IMG/VR virus record: IMGVR_UViG_3300042922_000643 | Span: 1-64,000 of that record | Reading direction: 5' to 3' (one strand) | DNA: 64,000 bases | Translations under genes and position numbers: made by a program | Part shown: piece by piece, positions 9,953-36,748 of the stretch | Layout of the letters: every line of letters starts with the position of its first letter | Position numbering within the stretch: position 1 is the first letter of the stretch | Notes under the pieces: model-generated | Seen by the model: the letters and a program-made list of their open reading frames with translations, nothing else | Told to the model about the DNA's origin: nothing | The model's database searches: none

Positions 9953-10151
9953 TGAAATGCAAACCGCCGTATTCGATGCCAATGGTAACATTGTCACTGA
10001 GGGAGATTTTGTACGCTCCCTAAAAACAGGATTTACCTGGGTTGTACTGGGAAGCAATGAAGTGATTGTTTCCTTAGCTTATGGCCCCATACAAGAAGCA
10101 GTCCGTCTTGAGGTATTCCGCACTGAATTTGTGCTTGAAAAATAGAGCATG

Positions 10152-10400
10152 CTTTTTACGTCCTTCCTCCCCTAAGGTCCTCAGATAAAGGTAGCTTACA
10201 GGTATCTTTATCAATTCTTCATTCATATAACTTACCGAGGGGCAAATCGGTAAGGTGAGGGAGCCGCCTAAAACTGTTGACCACAGCAGAAGGTTGGAAT
10301 CGTGGCGGTGAGCGGAACCGTAATAATCCGTTAGCTCTGGAGGTGGGATGTCTTGGTCGGCATTCATGTCGCCACCTCTGGGGCGAATCTTTTAAAAAAG
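10152..10400 (+). ncRNA. Candidate multi-branched structured ncRNA
   Basis: Nested stems in an intergenic gap: GATAAAGGTA/TATCTTTATC, CTTACCGA/TCGGTAAG, CCTCA/TGAGG, GCCGCC/GGCGGT, GAGGTGG/CCACCTC; ends pair through CGTCC/GGGCG and CTTTTTA/TAAAAAAG. Confidence 0.5.
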
Positions 10401-10411
10401 GGGGTATATTT

Positions 10412-10687
10412 ATGAGTGACTTTAGCAAGTTAGACCTCGTACATGCCACGCTAAGCGCTTTAAGGGACGGGTATAGACCGTCTATTCTATCTCCCGTAAA
10501 AACTCATGACGTAAAGCGACAGTGGCACTGTTGCCATATTACATGTGACAATCTGGCTGACTTTGTATTACATAGTGATAATCACTTCGAGGATTACACT
10601 CATATGTGTACTGACCACGTTGCACATTATCAAGAAGATTATGACCATAAGACGCCTATTACTCGGCCAGAGAGAGGAGAAACTTAA
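10412..10687 (+). CDS. Cys/His-rich hypothetical protein
   Basis: ATG10412 after AAGGGGGT; CCHITC...HMCTDH. Confidence 0.65.
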   Translation: MSDFSKLDLVHATLSALRDGYRPSILSPVKTHDVKRQWHCCHITCDNLADFVLHSDNHFEDYTHMCTDHVAHYQEDYDHKTPITRPERGET

Positions 10688-10818
10688 AAAATGATATTTA
10701 TTAATGCACTAGAAAAGTTCGTCAATTTTCTTGCTCTTATAGAAATGGTTCTTTTGGAACACGAGGATAACTCTTGAAGTCTGTATAATCAAAATCTTGA
10801 TATGGGAGGTGATATAAG

Positions 10819-11337
10819 ATGGCAAGTAGAAAAATGTTCAAAACTTCACTGTCATGGAGTAATTATCTTTGGGTTTTTGCTGTAGAACCTAAACCTCGAC
10901 CAGATATCATGAGAGGAATTACATCTCGTGGATCGATAAGTCCTTATGAAACTTACAATGCTAGAAGTTATGTTATTGTAACTGTCGATTCACCATTGGC
11001 AAGAACTTTGGGTGTCAGCATTCCAGACATACCTGTTATTCAAGCAATCCTTGATATGGGTTTTCGTAATGATAAAAAGAGCTCACATTATCCTGGCCAC
11101 CATTACATTCCAGGACTACGTGTTGAACGTATCGGAGAACAAAGAGCCCATCAAATTGTCAGTGAACCTGAACGATTCTTTAGGCAGGATGTCATTGAAT
11201 TTTATAAGGAGAGAGGAATTACATTGGACCAAATGGTAATAGAACTATTGCAACCTATGGAATCATACGAACTACCCATATCTTTTGAATTACCCAGATA
11301 TCACAAGCTTGGTCCAGAATGGACCCACTTAGAATGA
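10819..11337 (+). CDS. Hypothetical protein
   Basis: GGGAGGTG RBS; TGTATAAT upstream. Confidence 0.7.
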   Translation: MASRKMFKTSLSWSNYLWVFAVEPKPRPDIMRGITSRGSISPYETYNARSYVIVTVDSPLARTLGVSIPDIPVIQAILDMGFRNDKKSSHYPGHHYIPGLRVERIGEQRAHQIVSEPERFFRQDVIEFYKERGITLDQMVIELLQPMESYELPISFELPRYHKLGPEWTHLE

Positions 11338-11358
11338 TCATAAAGGAGAGGAAACGTT

Positions 11359-11820
11359 ATGGAAGAGAGGGGGACGAGTCAGAACCTATTCTACGAAGCT
11401 GAATTCGATGGTTCTTCAAAACCTGATATACAATTTTCTAGTGTTGGCGGTGTGATCTATAACCCCGCTGGCGATATTATTTGTGAATATGGACGCGAAG
11501 TACCTTTCACGAATAATATTTACGAGCTTGAATATTTAGCACTTATTGAAATCATGAAAGAGCTACATCGTTTAAACGTGAAGAATGTTATCATCTCTGG
11601 CGATAGCAAATGGGTTATCTACAAAGTTTATCTTGGTAGCTCCAGATTAAAACTCCATGAAGAAAACCTTAAGCGTGTTCACGAAAAGGCTAGAAATTTA
11701 TTCCGAGATTTCGATTATTGCAGACTCAAGTGGGTTTCCCGAGATCTTAATTGCTATGCTCATAATCTATGTAATTCAGTTACCCAAAAAGAGAAAGACG
11801 AGCAGAAGAGCATAATGTAA
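11359..11820 (+). CDS. RNase HI-like protein
   Basis: FDGSS, ELEYLAL, GDSKWV, WVSRDLNCYAHNLC; the usual last Asp appears as His. Confidence 0.85.
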   Translation: MEERGTSQNLFYEAEFDGSSKPDIQFSSVGGVIYNPAGDIICEYGREVPFTNNIYELEYLALIEIMKELHRLNVKNVIISGDSKWVIYKVYLGSSRLKLHEENLKRVHEKARNLFRDFDYCRLKWVSRDLNCYAHNLCNSVTQKEKDEQKSIM

Positions 11821-11844
11821 TCCCTTCGTCTTTCTCTTTTTGGG
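11783..11844. repeat. Perfect 19-bp inverted repeat with 24-nt loop (possible terminator)
   Basis: CCCAAAAAGAGAAAGACGA (11783-11801) / TCGTCTTTCTCTTTTTGGG (11826-11844). Confidence 0.8.
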
Positions 11845-11925
11845 GTCCTGTAAATTTATTTCGGGATCGCAAATAATGTACTTCCCTTACCTAGTATATT
11901 TTGCTATGATATCTATAGTAAAGTT

Positions 11926-12366
11926 ATGGATAAGGGTAATCAGAAGAGGAGTGTGAATGTATTGAGTTATTCGTCTCATAGTTTTATCGGTCGATTGACT
12001 AGAGATCCTGAAGGCCGCAATGTGAATGCTGGCGGCGAAGAAGCCCGTGTAGTAAACTTCACAGTTGCAGTGGATCGCCCAGGCGTTAACAAAGGCGCTG
12101 ACTATTATCCCGTTGTTGTTTGGCGGAAACTGGCTGAAAATTGTGAACGTTACCTAGGGAAAGGTCGTCTAGTACATGTTGAAGGCCGTCCTCAGCAACG
12201 TAGTTATAAGACTCAGAAAGACGGCGTGGAAGTTACTGTGAATGTAACTGAAATTATCGCCAATGATGTTCAGTTCTTAGACCGTGCAGATGCGCCAGCA
12301 GCTCAGACACCTCCACCTGAAACGGACTATGCTCTAAATATCAGTGATGACGATTTGCCATTCTGA
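11926..12366 (+). CDS. ssb: Single-stranded DNA-binding protein
   Basis: IGRLTRDPE, VVVWRKLAE, KGRLVHVEGR, acidic DDDLPF tail; true start probably ~11953-11962. Confidence 0.95.
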   Translation: MDKGNQKRSVNVLSYSSHSFIGRLTRDPEGRNVNAGGEEARVVNFTVAVDRPGVNKGADYYPVVVWRKLAENCERYLGKGRLVHVEGRPQQRSYKTQKDGVEVTVNVTEIIANDVQFLDRADAPAAQTPPPETDYALNISDDDLPF

Positions 12367-12378
12367 GGAGGTACACTC

Positions 12379-12696
12379 TTGTCTGACCAAAGAAGAGATC
12401 GTATCGAGATGCGCCAAGGATTTCACCAATTCATGATGCATATGTATCAATCATATCTTCAGTCTAATTCCGAACAAAAAGCTAAAGAGATCGTCGCCGA
12501 GTGTATTAAGGAGCAGCTAAACTTGCTAATTGGCGACGATTTTCTGTCCTCTTCGGAGTGTGCAAAGCTAAAAGAACGGAAAGAAGCTTTGGATAAAGAA
12601 CTTGCTGCTTCTGACAATTACGACATGCAGCTTTATCTAGCGGAGAAGATTGATACTTTGCAAGGCGCAATCGATATAATGACTGAATCGTATTAA
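12379..12696 (+). CDS. Hypothetical protein
   Basis: GAGGAGG RBS, TTG start. Confidence 0.7.
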   Translation: MSDQRRDRIEMRQGFHQFMMHMYQSYLQSNSEQKAKEIVAECIKEQLNLLIGDDFLSSSECAKLKERKEALDKELAASDNYDMQLYLAEKIDTLQGAIDIMTESY

Positions 12697-12733
12697 ACCC
12701 TTGGTTTCAAACAGTATAAAGGAGTAGTGATAT

Positions 12734-31205: not shown

Positions 31206-31314
31206 CAAACATTGCCAAATTCCATGATATGTTATATAATTCATCTAGTATATGGGTGTGTTTTAAATAGATTGCAATCCTTGAGACGACCAATGAAATA
31301 AGGAGGACGCATGA

Positions 31315-32091
31315 ATGGGTTCTAAGCATTCAGGGCGAGCCTATCGTTTCCTTGTACCTATTGTGATTATTGTAGTTCTATTAATTGCATGGGGCACTAG
31401 AGAACATAGTCTAAGCCAGAAGCACCAGTCTACGATCTCTTCCCTTAAATCAGAACTAAGTAGCAAGGGTCAGGTTATTGAGAATAAGAATATCCTCATT
31501 CAGCAGAAACAAGCTGAACTTGATCTCCAGTCTTCGCTGCTGGAACAACAGCAAAAGAAGCTAGACAAAAGACAGGCTATTATCGAGCTGAATATTAAGG
31601 AGGCGCAAGTCTCCGATAATAAGATCGAAGCTCAAAAGAAGACTATCAATCAATTGCAAAAGAAGTTGTCTTCGGAACAGTCCAATACCAGTTTGAAAGC
31701 CAAGCCAACCACTGTAAATGCTACTACAGTCTCGGCAAAAGCATCAGGAAGCTTTCAATCTGGATGGACTGCAACTTACTATTCGCTAAGCGTGGCTTCC
31801 ACTGGGAAGAGACCAGGTCACCCTGGCTACGGAATCACGGCTAGCGGACGTAAGGTAGTAGACGGTGTTACGATTGCCGTTGATCCACGATACATTCCTT
31901 TGGGAACTTGGATCGAAATTAAAATGCCTAACGGCGAAGTCATCAAACGAAGAGCCGACGATACAGGCTCCGCCATTAAAGGACATAAGCTAGATATTTA
32001 TGTGGCTGGCGTCAGTGACTCATACATCTATCAAGAACTTGGTAAGAAACAAATCTCTATCCGTATTCTCGGAAAGGGAGAACTGAACTAA
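31315..32091 (+). CDS. Membrane-anchored coiled-coil plus 3D-domain cell-wall protein
   Basis: N-terminal TM; ATYY, GITASG, IAVDPRYIPLGT, ADDTGSAIKGHKLDIY. Confidence 0.9.
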   Translation: MGSKHSGRAYRFLVPIVIIVVLLIAWGTREHSLSQKHQSTISSLKSELSSKGQVIENKNILIQQKQAELDLQSSLLEQQQKKLDKRQAIIELNIKEAQVSDNKIEAQKKTINQLQKKLSSEQSNTSLKAKPTTVNATTVSAKASGSFQSGWTATYYSLSVASTGKRPGHPGYGITASGRKVVDGVTIAVDPRYIPLGTWIEIKMPNGEVIKRRADDTGSAIKGHKLDIYVAGVSDSYIYQELGKKQISIRILGKGELN

Positions 32092-32532: not shown

Positions 32533-32850
32533 ATGTGGTGTAGAATCATGGAGAACACGGAGAATCCTTCTAATATCTTTGAATTTGAAAGCAACAATGA
32601 TTTAATTGTTCATTATACCGTATCGAAAGAAACAAGCACTCCAGTTGTTGAGATTACAAAGTTAGCTACTATTGAAAATAGACTGGAAACATGTGCTATT
32701 AGTCTTATCAAAAATGAAATTCAGATCCACCTATATACAGGAGAACAGTTATTCAGAGTTTGCGTAGGTGGAATCAGAAGATTCATGTTGTTTGAGCATA
32801 ATGATACAGTTCATGAACGACTAATTATTGATGTAACGAAAGACTTGTAG
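32533..32850 (+). CDS. Hypothetical protein directly upstream of the rSAM cassette
   Basis: AGGAG RBS; its stop is followed immediately by the RBS of 32862. Confidence 0.7.
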   Translation: MWCRIMENTENPSNIFEFESNNDLIVHYTVSKETSTPVVEITKLATIENRLETCAISLIKNEIQIHLYTGEQLFRVCVGGIRRFMLFEHNDTVHERLIIDVTKDL

Positions 32851-32861
32851 GAGGAGTAGAA

Positions 32862-33392
32862 ATGGCCGTACCAGGCAGCCTGTGGGTTCAAGGGACCCAG
32901 CTTCGTTTTACGAGTCAAAGCGGAGTCAACTTTGCATATGAAGGTACTTATAGTAGCTCGCCTGCTGGAGCTAAACCAGGCAGCTCATGGATCGAAGGCG
33001 ATAACTTCGCTTATATCGACCAGTATGGTTCTAAAAGACTCGTTATTAATTATACTGCTACTAATATTCCCGCCGCAGTTGCAGGCAGCTTATGGATTTA
33101 TGGCAATTATCTTTATTGGATTAACACTAATAAGAATAAAACCTACGGACATGGAGATGCAACTCATCAGAATACAAGCTATAATGATGGTAGTTATAAC
33201 GATTATAATAATTCATCAACATCCCATGGTGATTCTACGGTAACTTTCCAAGATTCGCCGACACATGGTAATCATGTACCCTACCATGCGGACTGGCCTG
33301 CTTCACATACGGATAGCTATAACTATCAAGATACACACAACAATAGCTACCATACGGATACTCCACATGCTGATTATCCTATTCAAGTGTAG
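32862..33392 (+). CDS. Putative radical-SAM substrate: three GS(L/S)W repeats plus a tail with 14 aromatic-X-(D/N) motifs
   Basis: Repeats PGSLWVQG / PGSSWIEG / AGSLWIYG at 35-aa spacing; tail HGD,HQN,YND,YND,YNN,HGD,FQD,HGN,HAD,HTD,YQD,HNN,HTD,HAD. Confidence 0.75.
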   Translation: MAVPGSLWVQGTQLRFTSQSGVNFAYEGTYSSSPAGAKPGSSWIEGDNFAYIDQYGSKRLVINYTATNIPAAVAGSLWIYGNYLYWINTNKNKTYGHGDATHQNTSYNDGSYNDYNNSSTSHGDSTVTFQDSPTHGNHVPYHADWPASHTDSYNYQDTHNNSYHTDTPHADYPIQV

Positions 33393-33407
33393 GGAGGAGA
33401 GAACACA

Positions 33408-34628
33408 TTGACAACAGAAGTGAGACCTATGGGTGTTTCGTGTCCTTTAAAATGTGTTTATTGCTATCAAGAACCCCAGAGGGTTGCGGGAAATACTAAT
33501 GCAAAATATGATTTGGCGAAGATGATTCAGGAGATCTCAAAGACTCGAACAAAGAATATTAATTTCTTTGGTGGCGAGATCTTAATGATGCCTATAGAAG
33601 ATCTAGAGGTACTGCTGGCTTACGCTCATGTTAAGTTCGGTGGATCAGGTGTTCAAACCAGCGGATCTATCATGAGAGATGAACATATTGAACTCTTCAA
33701 AAAGTACAATGTTCAGCTGGGCTTCTCCATTGACGGTCCTAACGAGCTAAACAGTCTCCGAGTTCCACGCAATCCAAAGACTCCTATTGAAAGTACAACG
33801 GATAATACAATGAAATATATCAAGCTATCAAAAGAAGCTGGGCTTGATGTAGGCCTTATTATTACCCTTCATAGAGAAAACTCTACTCCAGAACGTATTC
33901 CACGGTTGTTTAATTTTATCAAGTGGTTATGGGATCTTGGTATTCGTAGCGGGAATATTCATACTCTAGAAATTGAATCTACAATGCCGAACCACGACTT
34001 TGTATTGACACAAGAAGAGAACATCTGGGCTTACACCCAACTTGCCGAGTTCTTTAAAACGCTTCCTGACCATGGATGGAATCCTTTCGCAGAGATTAAA
34101 GACTTACTGATGGGTAACGATCAAAAAACTCTTTGTTATTGGCACCGATGCGATCCATTGAATACTCAAGCTGTCCACGGAATCGAAGGTGACGGTGCAA
34201 TCTCTAACTGTGGACGAGCAAATAAAGAAGGAATTGACTGGGTCAAAGCTCCTGATAATTATTATGCAAGATACATCAGCTTCTATCATACGCCTCAAGA
34301 TATGGGTGGCTGTAATGGATGCCGCTTCTGGACAGTATGCGGAGGAAGTTGCCCAGGTGAATCCGATCAGGGGGATTTCAGAAATAAAACAACACATTGC
34401 TCTACTCAGAAAGCAATACTTTCCTATTATGAAAAAGAACTTATTGATGAAGGCAAGCTACCCATTACGACATCGCCTTTGCTTCCTCTTGTTGAACAGC
34501 TCGTTCTTAATGGTCTTGAAAGAGGAGAGAACTTATATCTTAATACTGTTATTTCAATGATTGAAGAGATGAGAACAGAAGTCATCCAACTGGAAGTCGT
34601 AGAGGAGGATATCAATGAAACTACTTGA
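33408..34628 (+). CDS. Radical SAM/SPASM peptide or protein maturase
   Basis: CPLKCVYC, FFGGE, QTSG, FSIDGP; SPASM cysteines CYWHRC, NC, CNGC-x5-C-x3-C-x15-C. Confidence 0.92.
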   Translation: MTTEVRPMGVSCPLKCVYCYQEPQRVAGNTNAKYDLAKMIQEISKTRTKNINFFGGEILMMPIEDLEVLLAYAHVKFGGSGVQTSGSIMRDEHIELFKKYNVQLGFSIDGPNELNSLRVPRNPKTPIESTTDNTMKYIKLSKEAGLDVGLIITLHRENSTPERIPRLFNFIKWLWDLGIRSGNIHTLEIESTMPNHDFVLTQEENIWAYTQLAEFFKTLPDHGWNPFAEIKDLLMGNDQKTLCYWHRCDPLNTQAVHGIEGDGAISNCGRANKEGIDWVKAPDNYYARYISFYHTPQDMGGCNGCRFWTVCGGSCPGESDQGDFRNKTTHCSTQKAILSYYEKELIDEGKLPITTSPLLPLVEQLVLNGLERGENLYLNTVISMIEEMRTEVIQLEVVEEDINETT

Positions 34629-35559
34629 TTTTAGTATGCCACCATTTGCAAGAACGGTTTGGGCCTCTCAAGAAATAGAGAAGGAGTGGCGTCCCAAACT
34701 GGCTTTAGCCTCTCAAGCTTATGAGCGTTTAGAGTATGAAACGGTTGTTCATGGCCTTAGAGCCTGTACAACAGCACATTGTACTCCTGATGATATGGTT
34801 CGTCGGATTCAATTTTATGCAAAGAAAGGTCTTATGTATCATCCCTTACAGCAAGTAGGTGCTTATACAGGGTTCGCTCATACACACCCTCCAGTTATTC
34901 CAGGAAAACCTTGGACCTGGTTCGGTGTTGTAGCTAAAGACCCTCTTGATGCTTACACCTTTGCTGAGGCATCTGCATTGACAGAAGATTCCGCGGGTAA
35001 GGAAATAGATCACTCAACGATTGGCACTCTTCTTGGATACCCTGAATGCTGCCGAAAGTTCTTCACAGATGTATGGGCCGCGGGATATGTTGATCCTGTA
35101 TGGCAACAAGCAGAAAACTGTGAAGGTGAATACGTAGTGAAGAAAGAAGAGCATCTTATTCAGCTAAGCAAGGAGACTCCATGGGAGACTTCACCACTAC
35201 TGAGATACATTGGAGTACGTATCATGCCTCACATTCCATGCTCTCATGATTGTAAACCTTCTCTGGTTATCGCAAGAAGTTGGTTGGATCTTGGTAGAGA
35301 GTTGGCCATACCAGGCATGGAAGAGCTTGAGCAATTTCTTCGGATGCCAGTAGAATGGGATTGCTTGAAGGGGATAGCCTATGTGTCTACTCCAATCTTC
35401 AAGATTGAAACGAATTCCATGACATGTTATCCACGGCATGTTGTTCAAAAGGAAGGAACATTTAGACCAAAGAGTGGAGCAAAAGGACTGAAGTTTCCTT
35501 TTATTCCGCTAGGATCTGATAAGTTTGCTCACCTCTTTGGAGGAGGAAGCGGGTGCTAA
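34615..35559 (+). CDS. Cys/His-rich partner protein (GYPECC motif, tentatively DUF483-like)
   Basis: Overlaps the rSAM stop; IGTLLGYPECC, HIPCSHDC, AHTH. Confidence 0.65.
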   Translation: MKLLDFSMPPFARTVWASQEIEKEWRPKLALASQAYERLEYETVVHGLRACTTAHCTPDDMVRRIQFYAKKGLMYHPLQQVGAYTGFAHTHPPVIPGKPWTWFGVVAKDPLDAYTFAEASALTEDSAGKEIDHSTIGTLLGYPECCRKFFTDVWAAGYVDPVWQQAENCEGEYVVKKEEHLIQLSKETPWETSPLLRYIGVRIMPHIPCSHDCKPSLVIARSWLDLGRELAIPGMEELEQFLRMPVEWDCLKGIAYVSTPIFKIETNSMTCYPRHVVQKEGTFRPKSGAKGLKFPFIPLGSDKFAHLFGGGSGC

Positions 35560-35562
35560 TTC

Positions 35563-35808
35563 ATGTTTAAACAACGTTTATGGGATTGCCTTTTGGCAGT
35601 CCTTTCTTTTATTGTAGCAATAGTATTAATCATTGGTATAGCTTTTCTAGCTGTTTTCTTGTCAGACATCTATTGGTTTAAGATACTTGTAAGTACTGTT
35701 GTTATTCTTATCTTGTCCTTCGTTGTTATTATCGCTCTTTCACTGTTTGTTAACTGGCTGTTTATTGAACCATACAAACATTGGAAAGAAGAAAATAAAA
35801 ACAGATAG
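35563..35808 (+). CDS. Small membrane protein (2 TM)
   Basis: Highly hydrophobic; 3 nt after the previous stop. Confidence 0.65.
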   Translation: MFKQRLWDCLLAVLSFIVAIVLIIGIAFLAVFLSDIYWFKILVSTVVILILSFVVIIALSLFVNWLFIEPYKHWKEENKNR

Positions 35809-35915: not shown

Positions 35916-36245
35916 ATGTTGATGAGATTGAGTTCGCAAAATGTAAGTAATGCTTTTATGACGTTCATGAAAGAGGCTCCTAAACAATACGAAGCTTGGC
36001 AAGAAATGATTATGAAACTTGACGTAGCAAGCGCACTTGTCAATAAGACAGAGGAGCTTGCCTATATTTCAGTTCTTGCCGCTGTTAGACTAGAAAGCGG
36101 TTTGGAGTTCCATGTAAAACAAGCAAAATCTTTTGGAGCTACGCGGGATGAAATCATTAGTGCAATTCTATTACCACTTCCCGCTGTTGGTAATGTAGCC
36201 ATTCAATCTCTACCAATCGCATTACAAGCTTACGATGTGTCATAA
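35916..36245 (+). CDS. Carboxymuconolactone decarboxylase (CMD/AhpD-like) family protein
   Basis: KTEELAYISVLAA...FHVKQAKSFGATRDEI. Confidence 0.8.
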   Translation: MLMRLSSQNVSNAFMTFMKEAPKQYEAWQEMIMKLDVASALVNKTEELAYISVLAAVRLESGLEFHVKQAKSFGATRDEIISAILLPLPAVGNVAIQSLPIALQAYDVS

Positions 36246-36350: not shown

Positions 36351-36707
36351 GTGAAACTTGTATTTACCAAGACACTACTGAACAACATCTACACAGTTAA
36401 TTTGGCTGTCGAAGAAGTTGAGGACACCGACACTGCTCTGTTCGCAGATTTCGGCGAACCTTCCATCAACATCGGTGGAGAGATCAAGTCAGGCGCTACC
36501 ACACTAGCGACATTGCCTGCGAACTTCCGTAAGGTTGTATCTCAGATGCCTGTCGTCATGCGGTTTGCTGACAAGGATTATTCCAACAATGCCAAAGCCG
36601 TAGCTGAAGCATGGGTGTTGACCGTCGAAGGTCGCATCAACACAGAGATGACAACTATCCGCGCAAAGACTGATGACTTTAGCGGTCCTGAGGAATTCAT
36701 CATCTAA
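36351..36707 (+). CDS. Monocistronic hypothetical protein, possibly highly expressed or virion-associated
   Basis: AAGGAGG RBS, many C-ending codons, own terminator. Confidence 0.75.
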   Translation: MKLVFTKTLLNNIYTVNLAVEEVEDTDTALFADFGEPSINIGGEIKSGATTLATLPANFRKVVSQMPVVMRFADKDYSNNAKAVAEAWVLTVEGRINTEMTTIRAKTDDFSGPEEFII

Positions 36708-36721
36708 TATCTACTTGCGCA

Positions 36722-36748
36722 AAGAGGGGCCGAAAGGCCTCTTTTTTA
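36722..36748 (+). terminator. Intrinsic terminator
   Basis: GGCC-GAAA-GGCC hairpin followed by TCTTTTTT. Confidence 0.75.

What the first reader, a model, noticed from the sequence alone, without database searches (positions are those of the whole stretch)
32862..33149. The rSAM substrate has a folded-looking triple-repeat N-terminus instead of a typical leader peptide
Seen: three repeats at exact 35-aa spacing (MAVPGSLWVQGTQLRF / GAKPGSSWIEGDNFAY / AAVAGSLWIYGNYLYW), rich in beta-favouring residues, with no signal peptide and no double-Gly cleavage site. Inference: G-x-x-W repeats of this kind recall phage fibre or decoration proteins. The modified tail could therefore be a rigidified virion appendage or a His/Asp metal-binding arm, which would be post-translational crosslinking of a structural protein.
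Basis: partly seen in the sequence, partly recalled or inferred. Interest (0 to 1): 0.68.

Follow-up and report, generated by a model that had tools for sequence, protein, structure and literature searches.

The report
Folded three-blade scaffold carrying rSAM-targeted His-x-Asp loop
This phage gene encodes a small folded beta domain built from three repeats, which displays a loop of His-x-Asp motifs that the neighbouring radical SAM enzyme most likely modifies; it belongs to a large, uncharacterised family that in smaller phages sits among the tail-fibre genes.

Summary
ORF 32862-33392 (176 aa) starts with three 35-aa repeats that chance does not explain. AlphaFold2 folds residues 1-100 at pLDDT 93-98 as three four-stranded blades.

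This domain is not a leader peptide. It is a modular, mostly viral domain: 452 clusters match at E<=1e-3. It also occurs in proteins with no radical SAM (rSAM) neighbour, and at internal or C-terminal positions.

What travels with the rSAM/SPASM enzyme and its DUF483-like partner is the C-terminal array of aromatic-x-Asp/Asn motifs (14 here, up to 54 in Thermus phages).
- In viral loci, 14 of 14 tailed genes with enough downstream DNA are followed by the rSAM.
- In cellular genomes the same enzyme pair sits beside His-x-Asp (HxD) arrays on unrelated scaffolds.
- Several of the enzymes carry an HxD tail of their own.

The last five residues match a conserved terminal motif and are modelled as a strand, so the array is probably a closed loop displayed on the domain.

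Homologues lie in tail or baseplate modules of Thermus, siphovirus-like and haloarchaeal viruses. The window's own copy, however, is a mobile three-gene cassette among replication genes. Its virion location and the chemistry (probably His-to-Asp crosslinks of the triceptide kind) remain inferred.

The parts
32850..32856 (+). Shine-Dalgarno sequence GGAGGAG, 5 nt before the ATG at 32862
   Evidence: Read from the sequence.
32862..32966 (+). Repeat/blade 1 (residues 1-35)
   Evidence: Self-alignment period of 35 aa. AF2 strands 7-10, 13-17, 23-27 and 29-32.
32967..33071 (+). Repeat/blade 2 (residues 36-70)
   Evidence: AF2 strands 42-45, 48-52, 58-61 and 63-68.
33072..33149 (+). Repeat/blade 3 (residues 71-96), which has only three strands of its own
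   Evidence: AF2 strands 77-80, 83-87 and 92-96.
33150..33374 (+). Array of 14 aromatic-x-Asp/Asn motifs (residues 97-171): HGD, HQN, YND, YND, YNN, HGD, FQD, HGN, HAD, HTD, YQD, HNN, HTD, HAD. This is the presumed rSAM substrate.
   Evidence: In the tail as analysed (residues 95-176), 14 of 21 aromatic residues have D/N at +2; the shuffle mean is 4.8 and 0 of 10000 shuffles reach 14. pLDDT is 44-68.
33375..33389 (+). C-terminal residues YPIQV (172-176): a conserved terminal motif (D-x-P-x-hydrophobic-I/V), modelled as a strand
   Evidence: The last residues (block 171-176) have mean pLDDT about 91 and are modelled as strand or bridge. The motif is found in 41 of 85 N-domain+HxD proteins and in 0 of 62 HxD proteins without the domain.
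33408..34628 (+). Radical SAM/SPASM enzyme (406 aa, TTG start, its own GGAGGAG site)
   Evidence: Pfam Radical_SAM 59.2 bits against a cut-off of 29.5. CX3CX2C at C12/C16/C19 and the full SPASM cysteine set are invariant in 11 homologues. The nearest solved chains are anSME and CteB.
34615..35559 (+). DUF483-like partner (314 aa); its start overlaps the end of the rSAM gene by 14 nt
   Evidence: Pfam DUF483 E 8.5e-4, below the cut-off. The Atlas places it in DUF483 clusters. It is adjacent or fused to the rSAM in 78 of 80 cellular loci. Conserved motifs are LLG[FY]PxCC and LPCSxxC.

Best explanation
The gene encodes a two-part protein, and the three genes 32862-35559 form one self-contained maturation cassette.

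Part 1 (residues 1-96) is an autonomous all-beta domain. It is built from three 35-aa units that resemble four-stranded PQQ-type propeller blades. It is a modular, mostly viral scaffold or attachment domain. It is not a leader peptide.

Part 2 (residues 97-171) is an array of 14 aromatic-x-Asp/Asn motifs. This array is the element that the adjacent SPASM radical SAM enzyme and its DUF483-like partner recognise and modify. The final residues YPIQV most likely fold back as the missing fourth strand of blade 3, so the array would be a loop held at both ends on the domain.

The most likely chemistry is inferred, not shown. It is one radical-mediated crosslink per motif, from the His/Tyr/Phe ring to C-beta of the Asp/Asn two residues on, as in triceptide cyclophanes. 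That would turn a floppy acidic His-rich loop into a rigid, protease-resistant and possibly metal-binding structure.

At family level the product is most likely an externally displayed tail-fibre-region protein. For this jumbo phage's own copy, that location is unproven.
For: Folded domain:
- AF2 pLDDT 93-98 over residues 1-100.
- The domain profile finds 452 representative clusters at E<=1e-3 and 152 at E<=1e-10.
- The domain occurs at N-terminal, internal and C-terminal positions, with LamG, Fn3-like and large unknown partner domains.
- The only structural look-alike cluster is 96% viral.
- Blade-like repeats: the profile hits designed PQQ-type propeller blades, 8prs at E 1.2e-4 and 8pra at 1.8e-4.

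The tail is the target:
- In IMG/VR and JGI loci, every N-domain gene with an HxD tail and enough downstream DNA is followed by the rSAM (14/14) and then by the DUF483-like gene. The eight loci with N-domain genes that lack tails have neither enzyme.
- Among the 80 best cellular relatives of the rSAM, 78 have DUF483 adjacent or fused (25 fusions) and 60 have a same-strand HxD-rich ORF. Only 1 has the N-domain.
- Eight of ten rSAM homologues aligned, and also Thermus phage phiLo, end in an HxD run of their own.

Motif statistics:
- Of 1652 His in 85 tails, 83% have D and 11% have N at +2.
- Tyr/Phe/Trp take the same register, with +2 D at 27-29% against a 16.8% background.

Enzyme class: the full SPASM cysteine set is present, and cyclophane maturases (AmcB, YhhB, XyeB, GrrM/OscB) are among the top NCBIfam matches.

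Cassette unity: only 32873-35559 is shared (67% DNA identity) with the otherwise unrelated contig L032.

Tail-module synteny.

Precedent: His C2 to C-beta cyclophanes on HAA, HNR and HTK motifs (PMC11499958), and the rSAM-matured His-x-Ser effector HxsA (PMC13128918).
Against: - No experimental datum exists for any member.
- All NCBIfam matches to the rSAM are far below their cut-offs (best 72.5 bits against 425) and cover mainly the generic rSAM core. The chemistry is therefore not assignable by homology.
- The complex prediction of rSAM with the substrate gave no verdict.
- Docking of the C-terminal strand rests on one AF2 model, whose coordinates I could not inspect.
- The window's copy lies among replication genes. 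Its closest relative lies beside type IV secretion genes.
- The ends of tail modules are also common sites for accessory 'moron' genes, so synteny does not prove a structural role.
- His/Asp arrays can bind metals without any modification.
Confidence: 0.6

Rival explanations
1. Classical RiPP. The triple-repeat domain would be a long, folded-protein-derived leader (like NHLP or Nif11 leaders). The maturase would recognise it, it would be cut off, and the modified His/Asp peptide would be released as a bioactive product at lysis.
For: The gene order of precursor, rSAM and partner is the usual RiPP layout. N-domain proteins with Cys-rich tails also sit next to an rSAM, as would be expected of a reusable leader.
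Against: - No protease or exporter is present in the cassette or in any of the viral loci read.
- The domain occurs without any rSAM, and at C-terminal or internal positions.
- Homologous enzymes act next to HxD arrays that lack the domain (78 of the 79 cellular loci without the domain have the DUF483 partner, 60 of 80 have an HxD ORF), and some carry HxD tails themselves.
- Some members have a further globular domain after the array (P0056).
- The terminal motif goes with the domain, not with the enzyme.
Confidence: 0.1
2. Non-structural accessory effector. The cassette would be a mobile 'moron' whose modified His/Asp protein acts in the infected cell or its envelope. It could serve superinfection exclusion or counter-defence, as a phage-borne analogue of the HXS system that blocks phage DNA entry.
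For: - The cassette is portable and self-contained.
- In this phage it sits in an early/replication region.
- Its closest relative is beside conjugation genes.
- Some cellular HxD proteins carry Tat-type signal peptides, read by eye and not run through a predictor.
- HxsA shows that rSAM-matured His-x-Ser arrays can act on phage DNA entry (PMC13128918).
Against: - No PADLOC match beyond generic viperin-like rSAM similarity.
- The components differ from HXS: one rSAM plus DUF483 rather than HxsB/C/D, no peptidoglycan-binding domain, and an acidic rather than basic array.
- P0003 has no signal peptide.
- The placement in tail modules recurs across unrelated viruses.
Confidence: 0.15
3. Unmodified metal-binding arm. 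The His/Asp array would simply chelate divalent metal, as the His-x-His motifs of T4 gp37 bind iron (from my own knowledge). The rSAM/DUF483 pair would act on something else, and the enzymes' His-rich tails would serve metal or cluster loading.
For: The tails contain 14.6% His and 16.8% Asp. His-rich tails on the enzymes themselves recall metallochaperone tails.
Against: Metal binding alone does not explain the strict +2 register (94% D/N after His), nor the replacement of His by Tyr/Phe/Trp in the same register. It also does not explain why HxD arrays co-occur with this enzyme pair across phyla and scaffolds.
Confidence: 0.1
4. DNA modification module, the guess published for the Thermus phage 'rSAM module'. 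The rSAM and the DUF483 protein (with a methyltransferase domain in most homologues) would modify phage DNA, and the third protein would be an accessory.
For: PMC11437467 reports rSAM/DUF483 homologues next to deazapurine DNA-modification genes in cyanobacteria. In this window the cassette lies among primase, dUTPase, dNMP kinase, thymidine kinase and helicase genes. Most DUF483 homologues carry a class I methyltransferase domain.
Against: - SPASM enzymes are typically peptide or protein maturases (established knowledge).
- The invariant companion is an HxD array, on many scaffolds including apparent Tat-signal proteins and 65-aa peptides.
- HxD tails are fused to the enzyme.
- The cassette moves without any nucleotide-metabolism genes.
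Confidence: 0.05

Closest known systems
Triceptide (three-residue cyclophane) RiPP systems, e.g. HaaA/HaaB, YhhA/YhhB, HtkA/HtkB (PMC11499958)
   Same: A SPASM-type rSAM lies next to a substrate with repeated aromatic-X-X motifs. His is a known ring donor (HAA, HNR, HTK). Other aromatics can take the same position. Cyclophane maturases are among the best NCBIfam matches.
   Different: - All scores are far below family cut-offs.
- The third residue is Asp/Asn.
- There are up to 54 motifs per protein.
- The substrate is a folded protein rather than leader plus core.
- The partner is DUF483, with or without a methyltransferase domain.
- There is no protease or exporter.
- The context is viral.
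- No mass data exist.
HXS anti-phage system: HxsA with His-x-Ser repeats, matured by HxsB/HxsC/HxsD (PMC13128918)
   Same: An rSAM-matured protein, not a small peptide, carrying a His-x-small-residue repeat array. It is linked to phage biology.
   Different: HXS is bacterial, with two rSAMs plus HxsD, a peptidoglycan-binding domain, five basic repeats and a reported +8 Da change. Here there is one rSAM plus DUF483, and an acidic array of 14-54 motifs on a propeller-blade scaffold. The HxsB model scores 36 bits against a cut-off of 370.
The 'rSAM module' of Thermus phages Cumys and phiMa (PMC11437467)
   Same: The same three-gene cassette. The substrate is 30% identical, and the DUF483-like protein is 46-47% identical.
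   Different: That paper left the third protein uncharacterised and proposed DNA modification. The analysis here identifies that protein as a folded scaffold carrying the HxD array that co-varies with the enzymes.
PQQ-type beta-propeller blades (BamB-like; designed 'Bagel' proteins 8prs and 8pra)
   Same: Units of 35-40 aa with four strands and a similar sequence pattern, roughly 'G-S/T-x-W/Y-V/I-x-G ... L-x-Y-I-D/N-x-x-G'. A terminal strand completes a blade, as in propeller 'velcro' closure.
   Different: There are only three blades. Pfam PQQ models do not match at E<0.1. The overall model resembles beta-prism II lectins only weakly (LlpA, Z 4.0). The oligomeric state is unknown.
Anaerobic sulfatase-maturating enzyme (anSME) and the SCIFF maturase CteB
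   Same: These are the nearest solved relatives of the rSAM. anSME is a precedent for a SPASM enzyme acting on a protein.
   Different: The matches have E around 1e-4 and cover only the N-terminal core. The substrates and chemistry are different.

Membership tests
SPASM-domain radical SAM maturases | CX3CX2C cluster motif and a Radical_SAM domain above the Pfam cut-off | tested here: met
   C12/C16/C19 are invariant. PF04055 scores 59.2 bits against 29.5.
SPASM-domain radical SAM maturases | C-terminal seven-Cys SPASM motif (CX9-15GX4C ... CX2CX5CX3C ... C) | tested here: met
   C248-X14-G263-X4-C268, C302-X2-C305-X5-C311-X3-C315 and C331 are all invariant in 11 homologues.
SPASM-domain radical SAM maturases | Demonstrated modification of the adjacent peptide or protein | not testable with these tools
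   This needs co-expression and mass spectrometry. The complex prediction gave no verdict.
Triceptide synthase systems (3-CyFE) | Precursor with aromatic-X-X motifs | tested here: met
   There are 14 aromatic-x-D/N motifs, and 0 of 10000 shuffles reach this count. Across the family, 94% of His have D/N at +2.
Triceptide synthase systems (3-CyFE) | Maturase scores above the curated cut-off of a cyclophane-maturase model | tested here: not met
   AmcB 72.5 bits against 425, YhhB 50 against 445, XyeB 38.8 against 450, GrrM/OscB 38.7 against 310.
Triceptide synthase systems (3-CyFE) | Loss of 2 Da per motif and a ring-to-C-beta bond | not testable with these tools
   No mass or NMR data are available.
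HXS defence system | HxsA (peptidoglycan-binding domain plus His-x-Ser repeats) with HxsB, HxsC and HxsD | tested here: not met
   The motif is His-x-Asp, and the substrate has no Pfam domain. There is one rSAM. HxsB scores 36.1 bits against 370. PADLOC shows nothing specific.
RiPP precursors with long leaders (NHLP/Nif11 type) | The leader is recognised by the maturase and removed at a Gly-Gly site by a PCAT or protease in the cluster | tested here: not met
   There is no protease or transporter in the cassette or in related loci. The domain occurs without an rSAM, and the enzymes occur without the domain.
Phage tail fibre / adhesin proteins | The gene lies in the tail or baseplate module | tested here: inconclusive
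   Met in homologues. Not met for the window's copy or for its closest relative.
Phage tail fibre / adhesin proteins | Match to a known fibre or decoration family or fold | tested here: not met
   The substrate has no hit in Pfam, PHROGs or NCBIfam. In BFVD only the Thermus phage homologue matches. PDB Foldseek gives no match at E<=1e-3.
Phage tail fibre / adhesin proteins | Presence in purified virions | not testable with these tools
   The search for phiMa virion mass-spectrometry data turned up no virion proteomics for phiMa or Cumys; the listed papers were not read for this.
PQQ-type beta-propeller repeats | Four-stranded blades with the family's sequence pattern, closed into a ring of four or more blades | tested here: inconclusive
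   Blade-like units are seen, and the profile hits 8prs and 8pra at about 1e-4. But there are only three blades, and no Pfam PQQ match.
Beta-prism II (monocot mannose-binding) lectins | Three four-stranded sheets around a pseudo-threefold axis, with QxDxNxVxY sites | tested here: inconclusive
   The best VIA rows are LlpA (Z 4.0, 87 aa), Marasmius lectin (Z 2.6) and curculin (Z 2.1). All are below a meaningful level, and the lectin motif is absent.

The most novel reading that the evidence does not exclude
Phages of bacteria and archaea would use a radical SAM enzyme to crosslink a His-x-Asp loop on a tail-fibre-region protein. The loop would be held on a three-blade mini-propeller. This would be the first radical-SAM post-translational modification of a virion structural protein. 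It would also be the viral branch of a widespread, uncharacterised rSAM-DUF483 system that matures HxD arrays on many scaffolds in at least 15 phyla.
Probability: 0.3. Interest if true: 0.85.

Novelty: new variant of a known kind. Interest (0 to 1): 0.72.

Why it matters
If this is right, radical SAM peptide chemistry is not confined to small secreted natural products or to the bacterial HXS defence effector. Viruses would also use it to harden or functionalise a displayed loop on a folded protein.

The analysis defines three things that the Pfam, PHROGs, NCBIfam and PADLOC libraries searched do not cover:
- a three-blade viral scaffold domain (452 clusters);
- an HxD-array substrate class;
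- an obligate rSAM-DUF483 enzyme pair, often fused, found from Bacillota to Nitrososphaeraceae.

It gives the published Thermus phage 'rSAM module' a testable alternative to the DNA-modification guess. Those phages are culturable, so the hypothesis can be tested directly.

Tried and rejected
- The search for related loci with alignments A3, A4 and A5 failed because no stretch was conserved enough. I replaced it with a degenerate DNA pattern scan and a scan with the rSAM alignment.
- Complex prediction of the rSAM with the full substrate scored 0.26 and 0.22 against a mark of 0.32. That is no verdict and is not used as evidence.
- The fold of the N-domain has no PDB Foldseek match at E<=1e-3. 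The best VIA-wide score is Z 4.0. I do not claim that the fold is new.
- The fold of the DUF483-like protein (AF2 pLDDT 79) best matches 2guk, a protein of unknown function (Z 6.0), and NleE (Z 4.2). No function can be drawn from this.
- Pfam, PHROGs and NCBIfam give zero hits on the substrate. PADLOC shows nothing specific.
- tblastn of the 'MAWTAPRTW' N-extension against isolated phages found nothing.
- The word-based protein search found only two relatives, so the exhaustive search was justified.
- Literature searches for HxD repeats with rSAM, for triceptides in phages and for rSAM-crosslinked tail fibres found nothing relevant.
- I considered a PAAR-like spike tip and rejected it. There is no Pfam or fold match, and Cumys has a separate 'tip protein'.
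- I considered a conserved fourth gene upstream and rejected it. The window's 105-aa ORF is unrelated to the upstream genes of other loci, and the shared DNA starts at 32873.

Full report
**The observation**

ORF 32862-33392 on the + strand (176 aa, P0003) follows a GGAGGAG site. An ungapped BLOSUM62 self-comparison of residues 1-105 scores 46 at offset 35 and 30 at offset 70. All other offsets are negative, and none of 2000 shuffles reaches 46. Homologues keep the period, at 34 or 35 aa.

**The three-gene unit**

The next gene (33408-34628) is a radical SAM enzyme. Pfam gives 59.2 bits against a cut-off of 29.5. It has a CX3CX2C motif and a complete SPASM cysteine set, invariant across eleven homologues. 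Its nearest solved relatives are anSME and CteB. All NCBIfam matches are far below their cut-offs, though cyclophane maturases (AmcB, YhhB, XyeB, GrrM/OscB) are among the best.

The third gene (34615-35559) overlaps the rSAM stop by 14 nt. It is DUF483-like. Its conserved motifs are LLG[FY]PxCC and LPCSxxC. Most homologues carry an extra class I methyltransferase domain, which this copy and the Thermus phage copies lack. Its predicted fold gave no informative match.

**The N-terminal domain is folded and modular**

No Pfam, PHROG or NCBIfam model matches the substrate, and the word-based search found only two relatives. I therefore ran the exhaustive profile search with residues 1-99. It found 452 representative clusters at E<=1e-3 and 152 at E<=1e-10.

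The domain occurs in several arrangements:
- at the N-terminus, followed by His-x-Asp arrays (92 of 153 sequences read);
- after an extra ~100-aa N-terminal module;
- before Cys-rich tails;
- at the C-terminus of larger proteins;
- split by an inserted LamG domain.

AlphaFold2 with 110 sequences models residues 1-100 at pLDDT 93-98. They form three units of four, four and three strands. The tail has pLDDT 44-68, and the last residues are again confident (about 91) and strand-like.

Foldseek and VIA-align find no convincing solved relative. The best match is the beta-prism II lectin LlpA at Z 4.0. BFVD returns only the Thermus phage homologue. The ESM Atlas returns one cluster that is 96% viral. 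A profile search of PDB sequences hits designed PQQ-type propeller blades (8prs at 1.2e-4, 8pra at 1.8e-4) with a clearly similar repeat pattern. Each 35-aa repeat is therefore best described as one propeller-like blade.

**The tail, not the domain, goes with the enzymes**

In the tail (residues 95-176), 14 of 21 aromatic residues are followed at +2 by Asp or Asn. The shuffle mean is 4.8, and 0 of 10000 shuffles reach 14. Nine of the motifs start with His and five with Tyr or Phe. Across 85 tails, 83% of 1652 His have Asp and 11% have Asn at +2. Tyr, Phe and Trp are moderately enriched in the same register. Motifs follow each other every 5, 4 or 3 residues.

A degenerate DNA pattern scan of IMG/VR gave 22 loci. 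Taken together with a JGI locus, every N-domain gene with an HxD tail and enough downstream DNA is followed by a homologous rSAM (14 of 14) and then by the DUF483-like gene. The eight loci whose N-domain genes lack such tails have neither enzyme.

Conversely, a scan of 185,579 species genomes with the rSAM alignment found at least 226 relatives. They span Bacillota, Acidobacteriota, Planctomycetota, Cyanobacteriota, Bacteroidota, Myxococcota, Actinomycetota, Chloroflexota, Armatimonadota and others, plus a Nitrososphaeraceae archaeon. In the 80 best loci:
- DUF483 is adjacent or fused in 78 (25 fusions);
- a same-strand HxD-rich ORF is present in 60;
- only one locus (Chengkuizengella, the closest relative at 51% identity) has the N-domain.

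In those genomes the arrays sit on 60-110-aa peptides, on proteins whose N-termini look like Tat signals (by eye), on coiled-coil proteins, or at the end of 900-1600-aa proteins.

Eight of ten rSAM homologues aligned, and the enzyme of Thermus phage phiLo, carry a short HxD run at their own C-terminus. These fusions and co-occurrences tie the HxD array to the enzyme pair. They also show that the enzyme pair operates next to arrays that lack the N-domain.

**The closed-loop model**

Blade 3 has only three strands of its own, and the protein's last residues are modelled as a confident strand. The terminal pattern P-x-hydrophobic-I/V occurs in the last ten residues of 41 of 85 N-domain+HxD proteins. 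It occurs in none of 62 HxD proteins that lack the domain. So it belongs with the domain and not with the enzyme. I infer a propeller-style 'velcro' closure that holds both ends of the array. This inference rests on one model whose coordinates I could not inspect.

**Where the gene lies**

In smaller viruses the gene lies in tail modules:
- In Thermus phages phiMa and Cumys, the homologue (343 aa, 53-54 motifs) follows the baseplate wedge and 'tail collar fiber' genes.
- In a 40-kb JGI contig it follows the tail tube, chaperones, tape measure and two further genes.
- In several IMG/VR loci it lies a few genes after a lambda-J-like host-specificity protein and directly after a small fibre-like gene.
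- In L006 and L022 the upstream 95-aa gene is the same module that forms the N-extension of some family members.
- Tail-less domain genes in L030 are flanked by tail fibre genes.
- In a haloarchaeal megaplasmid provirus the gene follows baseplate J and a fibre-like 538-aa gene.

Among 50,697 isolated phage genomes, only the Thermus phages carry the family.

The window itself belongs to a 251.5-kb virus record. Its terminase lies near 175 kb and a weak sheath match near 159 kb. The cassette at 33 kb lies among helicase, dUTPase, primase, dNMP kinase, resolvase and thymidine kinase genes. There is only one copy of the domain in the genome.

The closest homologue (65% identity) is on a 69-kb contig next to actin-like segregation and type IV secretion genes. 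Only the three cassette genes are shared with the window at the DNA level (67%, 32873-35559). The cassette is therefore a portable, self-contained unit. For this phage a virion role cannot be read from position.

**Mechanism**

Shown by computation: a folded scaffold; an aromatic-x-D/N array; a SPASM rSAM with an obligate DUF483 partner; and genetic coupling of the array to the enzymes.

Inferred: the enzyme modifies the array. The most likely reaction is a ring-to-C-beta crosslink within each motif, as in the His-containing triceptides HAA, HNR and HTK (PMC11499958). Two points favour this. The motif format is the triceptide format, and other aromatics can replace His in the same register. 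The rSAM-matured His-x-Ser effector HxsA (PMC13128918) is a conceptual neighbour but not a relative. Methylation probably adds to the maturation in the many systems where DUF483 is fused to a methyltransferase, but not in this one.

**Rivals**

- A cleavable long leader. No protease or exporter is present, and the domain occurs independently of the enzymes.
- A non-structural accessory or exclusion effector. This is compatible with the cassette's mobility and cannot be excluded.
- Plain metal binding. It does not explain the register or the coupling to the enzymes.
- The published DNA-modification guess (PMC11437467). It does not explain the invariant HxD companion on exported and peptide-sized scaffolds.

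**Novelty and verdict**

The libraries searched (Pfam, PHROGs, NCBIfam, PADLOC) and the literature searches I ran describe neither the domain, nor the HxD substrate class, nor the rSAM-DUF483 pairing. The only mention found is the 'rSAM module' note for Cumys and phiMa.

The kind of system, a SPASM rSAM maturing a repeat-motif substrate, is known. The substrate architecture, the partner, the motif and the viral tail context are new.

No alternative genetic code was applied by me; the tool itself reported TAG=Q for contigs L007 and L008.

Noticed in passing
L006, L010, L013, L014, L017, L022, L023, L024 (rSAM C-termini, alignment A6); L003:4758-6206 (Thermus phage phiLo): Most homologous rSAM enzymes end in a short His-x-Asp run of their own (for example HGD-x-PHGD-x-HGDHTD). 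phiLo has this enzyme-borne tail plus a DUF483-like gene, but no separate N-domain substrate, and IS605 transposase fragments lie just upstream. The tail could be a pseudo-substrate, a site of self-modification or a metal-loading tail. The window's enzyme lacks it.
   Followed up: partly
L032 (Logan contig, 69 kb), cassette at 10001-12702: The closest relative of the cassette sits between a metallophosphatase gene and ALP/MreB-like, TrbC, TrbL, PrgI and TraG-type genes (conjugation or type IV secretion). Glycosyltransferase and patatin genes lie upstream. Only the three cassette genes are shared with the window at the DNA level.
   Followed up: partly
L007:8001-8471 and L008:1558-2028: A family member with a Cys-rich tail instead of HxD (P0049) lies on contigs that the tool reads only with TAG=Q. 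It sits next to a 295-aa gene with a faint Radical_SAM hit. This suggests the same scaffold also displays thioether-type substrates in a stop-codon-recoded phage.
   Followed up: no
L037-L116 (cellular genomes): The rSAM and DUF483 are fused into one protein in 25 of 80 loci. HxD arrays there sit on 60-110-aa peptides, on proteins with apparent Tat signals (L046, L042), and at the C-terminus of 900-1600-aa proteins with no Pfam domain (for example L043:2848-5979). This is a widespread uncharacterised system.
   Followed up: partly
window 31315-32091 (+): A 258-aa protein with an N-terminal membrane anchor, a long Gln/Lys-rich coiled coil and a C-terminal 3D domain (Pfam E 8.7e-12). It is a likely cell-wall-acting protein, about 770 nt upstream of the cassette.
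   Followed up: no
window 35563-35808 and 35916-36245 (+): Directly downstream of the cassette lie an 81-aa double-membrane-span protein and a 109-aa CMD/AhpD-like protein (Pfam CMD E 8e-10). Neither is conserved next to the cassette in L032, so they are probably unrelated to it.
   Followed up: partly
window 36721-36746 (+) and 31212-31240 (+): There is a strong terminator-like hairpin (11 pairs followed by a T run) after ORF 36351-36707, and an 11-of-12 sigma-70-like promoter before the 3D-domain gene. No convincing terminator lies inside the three-gene cassette, which is consistent with one transcript.
   Followed up: no
P0093 (507 aa) and P0056 (562 aa): P0093 has a Laminin_G_3 domain inserted between blade 1 and blades 2-3, followed by 40 HxD motifs. 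P0056 has a ~330-aa unknown globular domain after the HxD array. The scaffold tolerates insertions, and the array need not be C-terminal.
   Followed up: no
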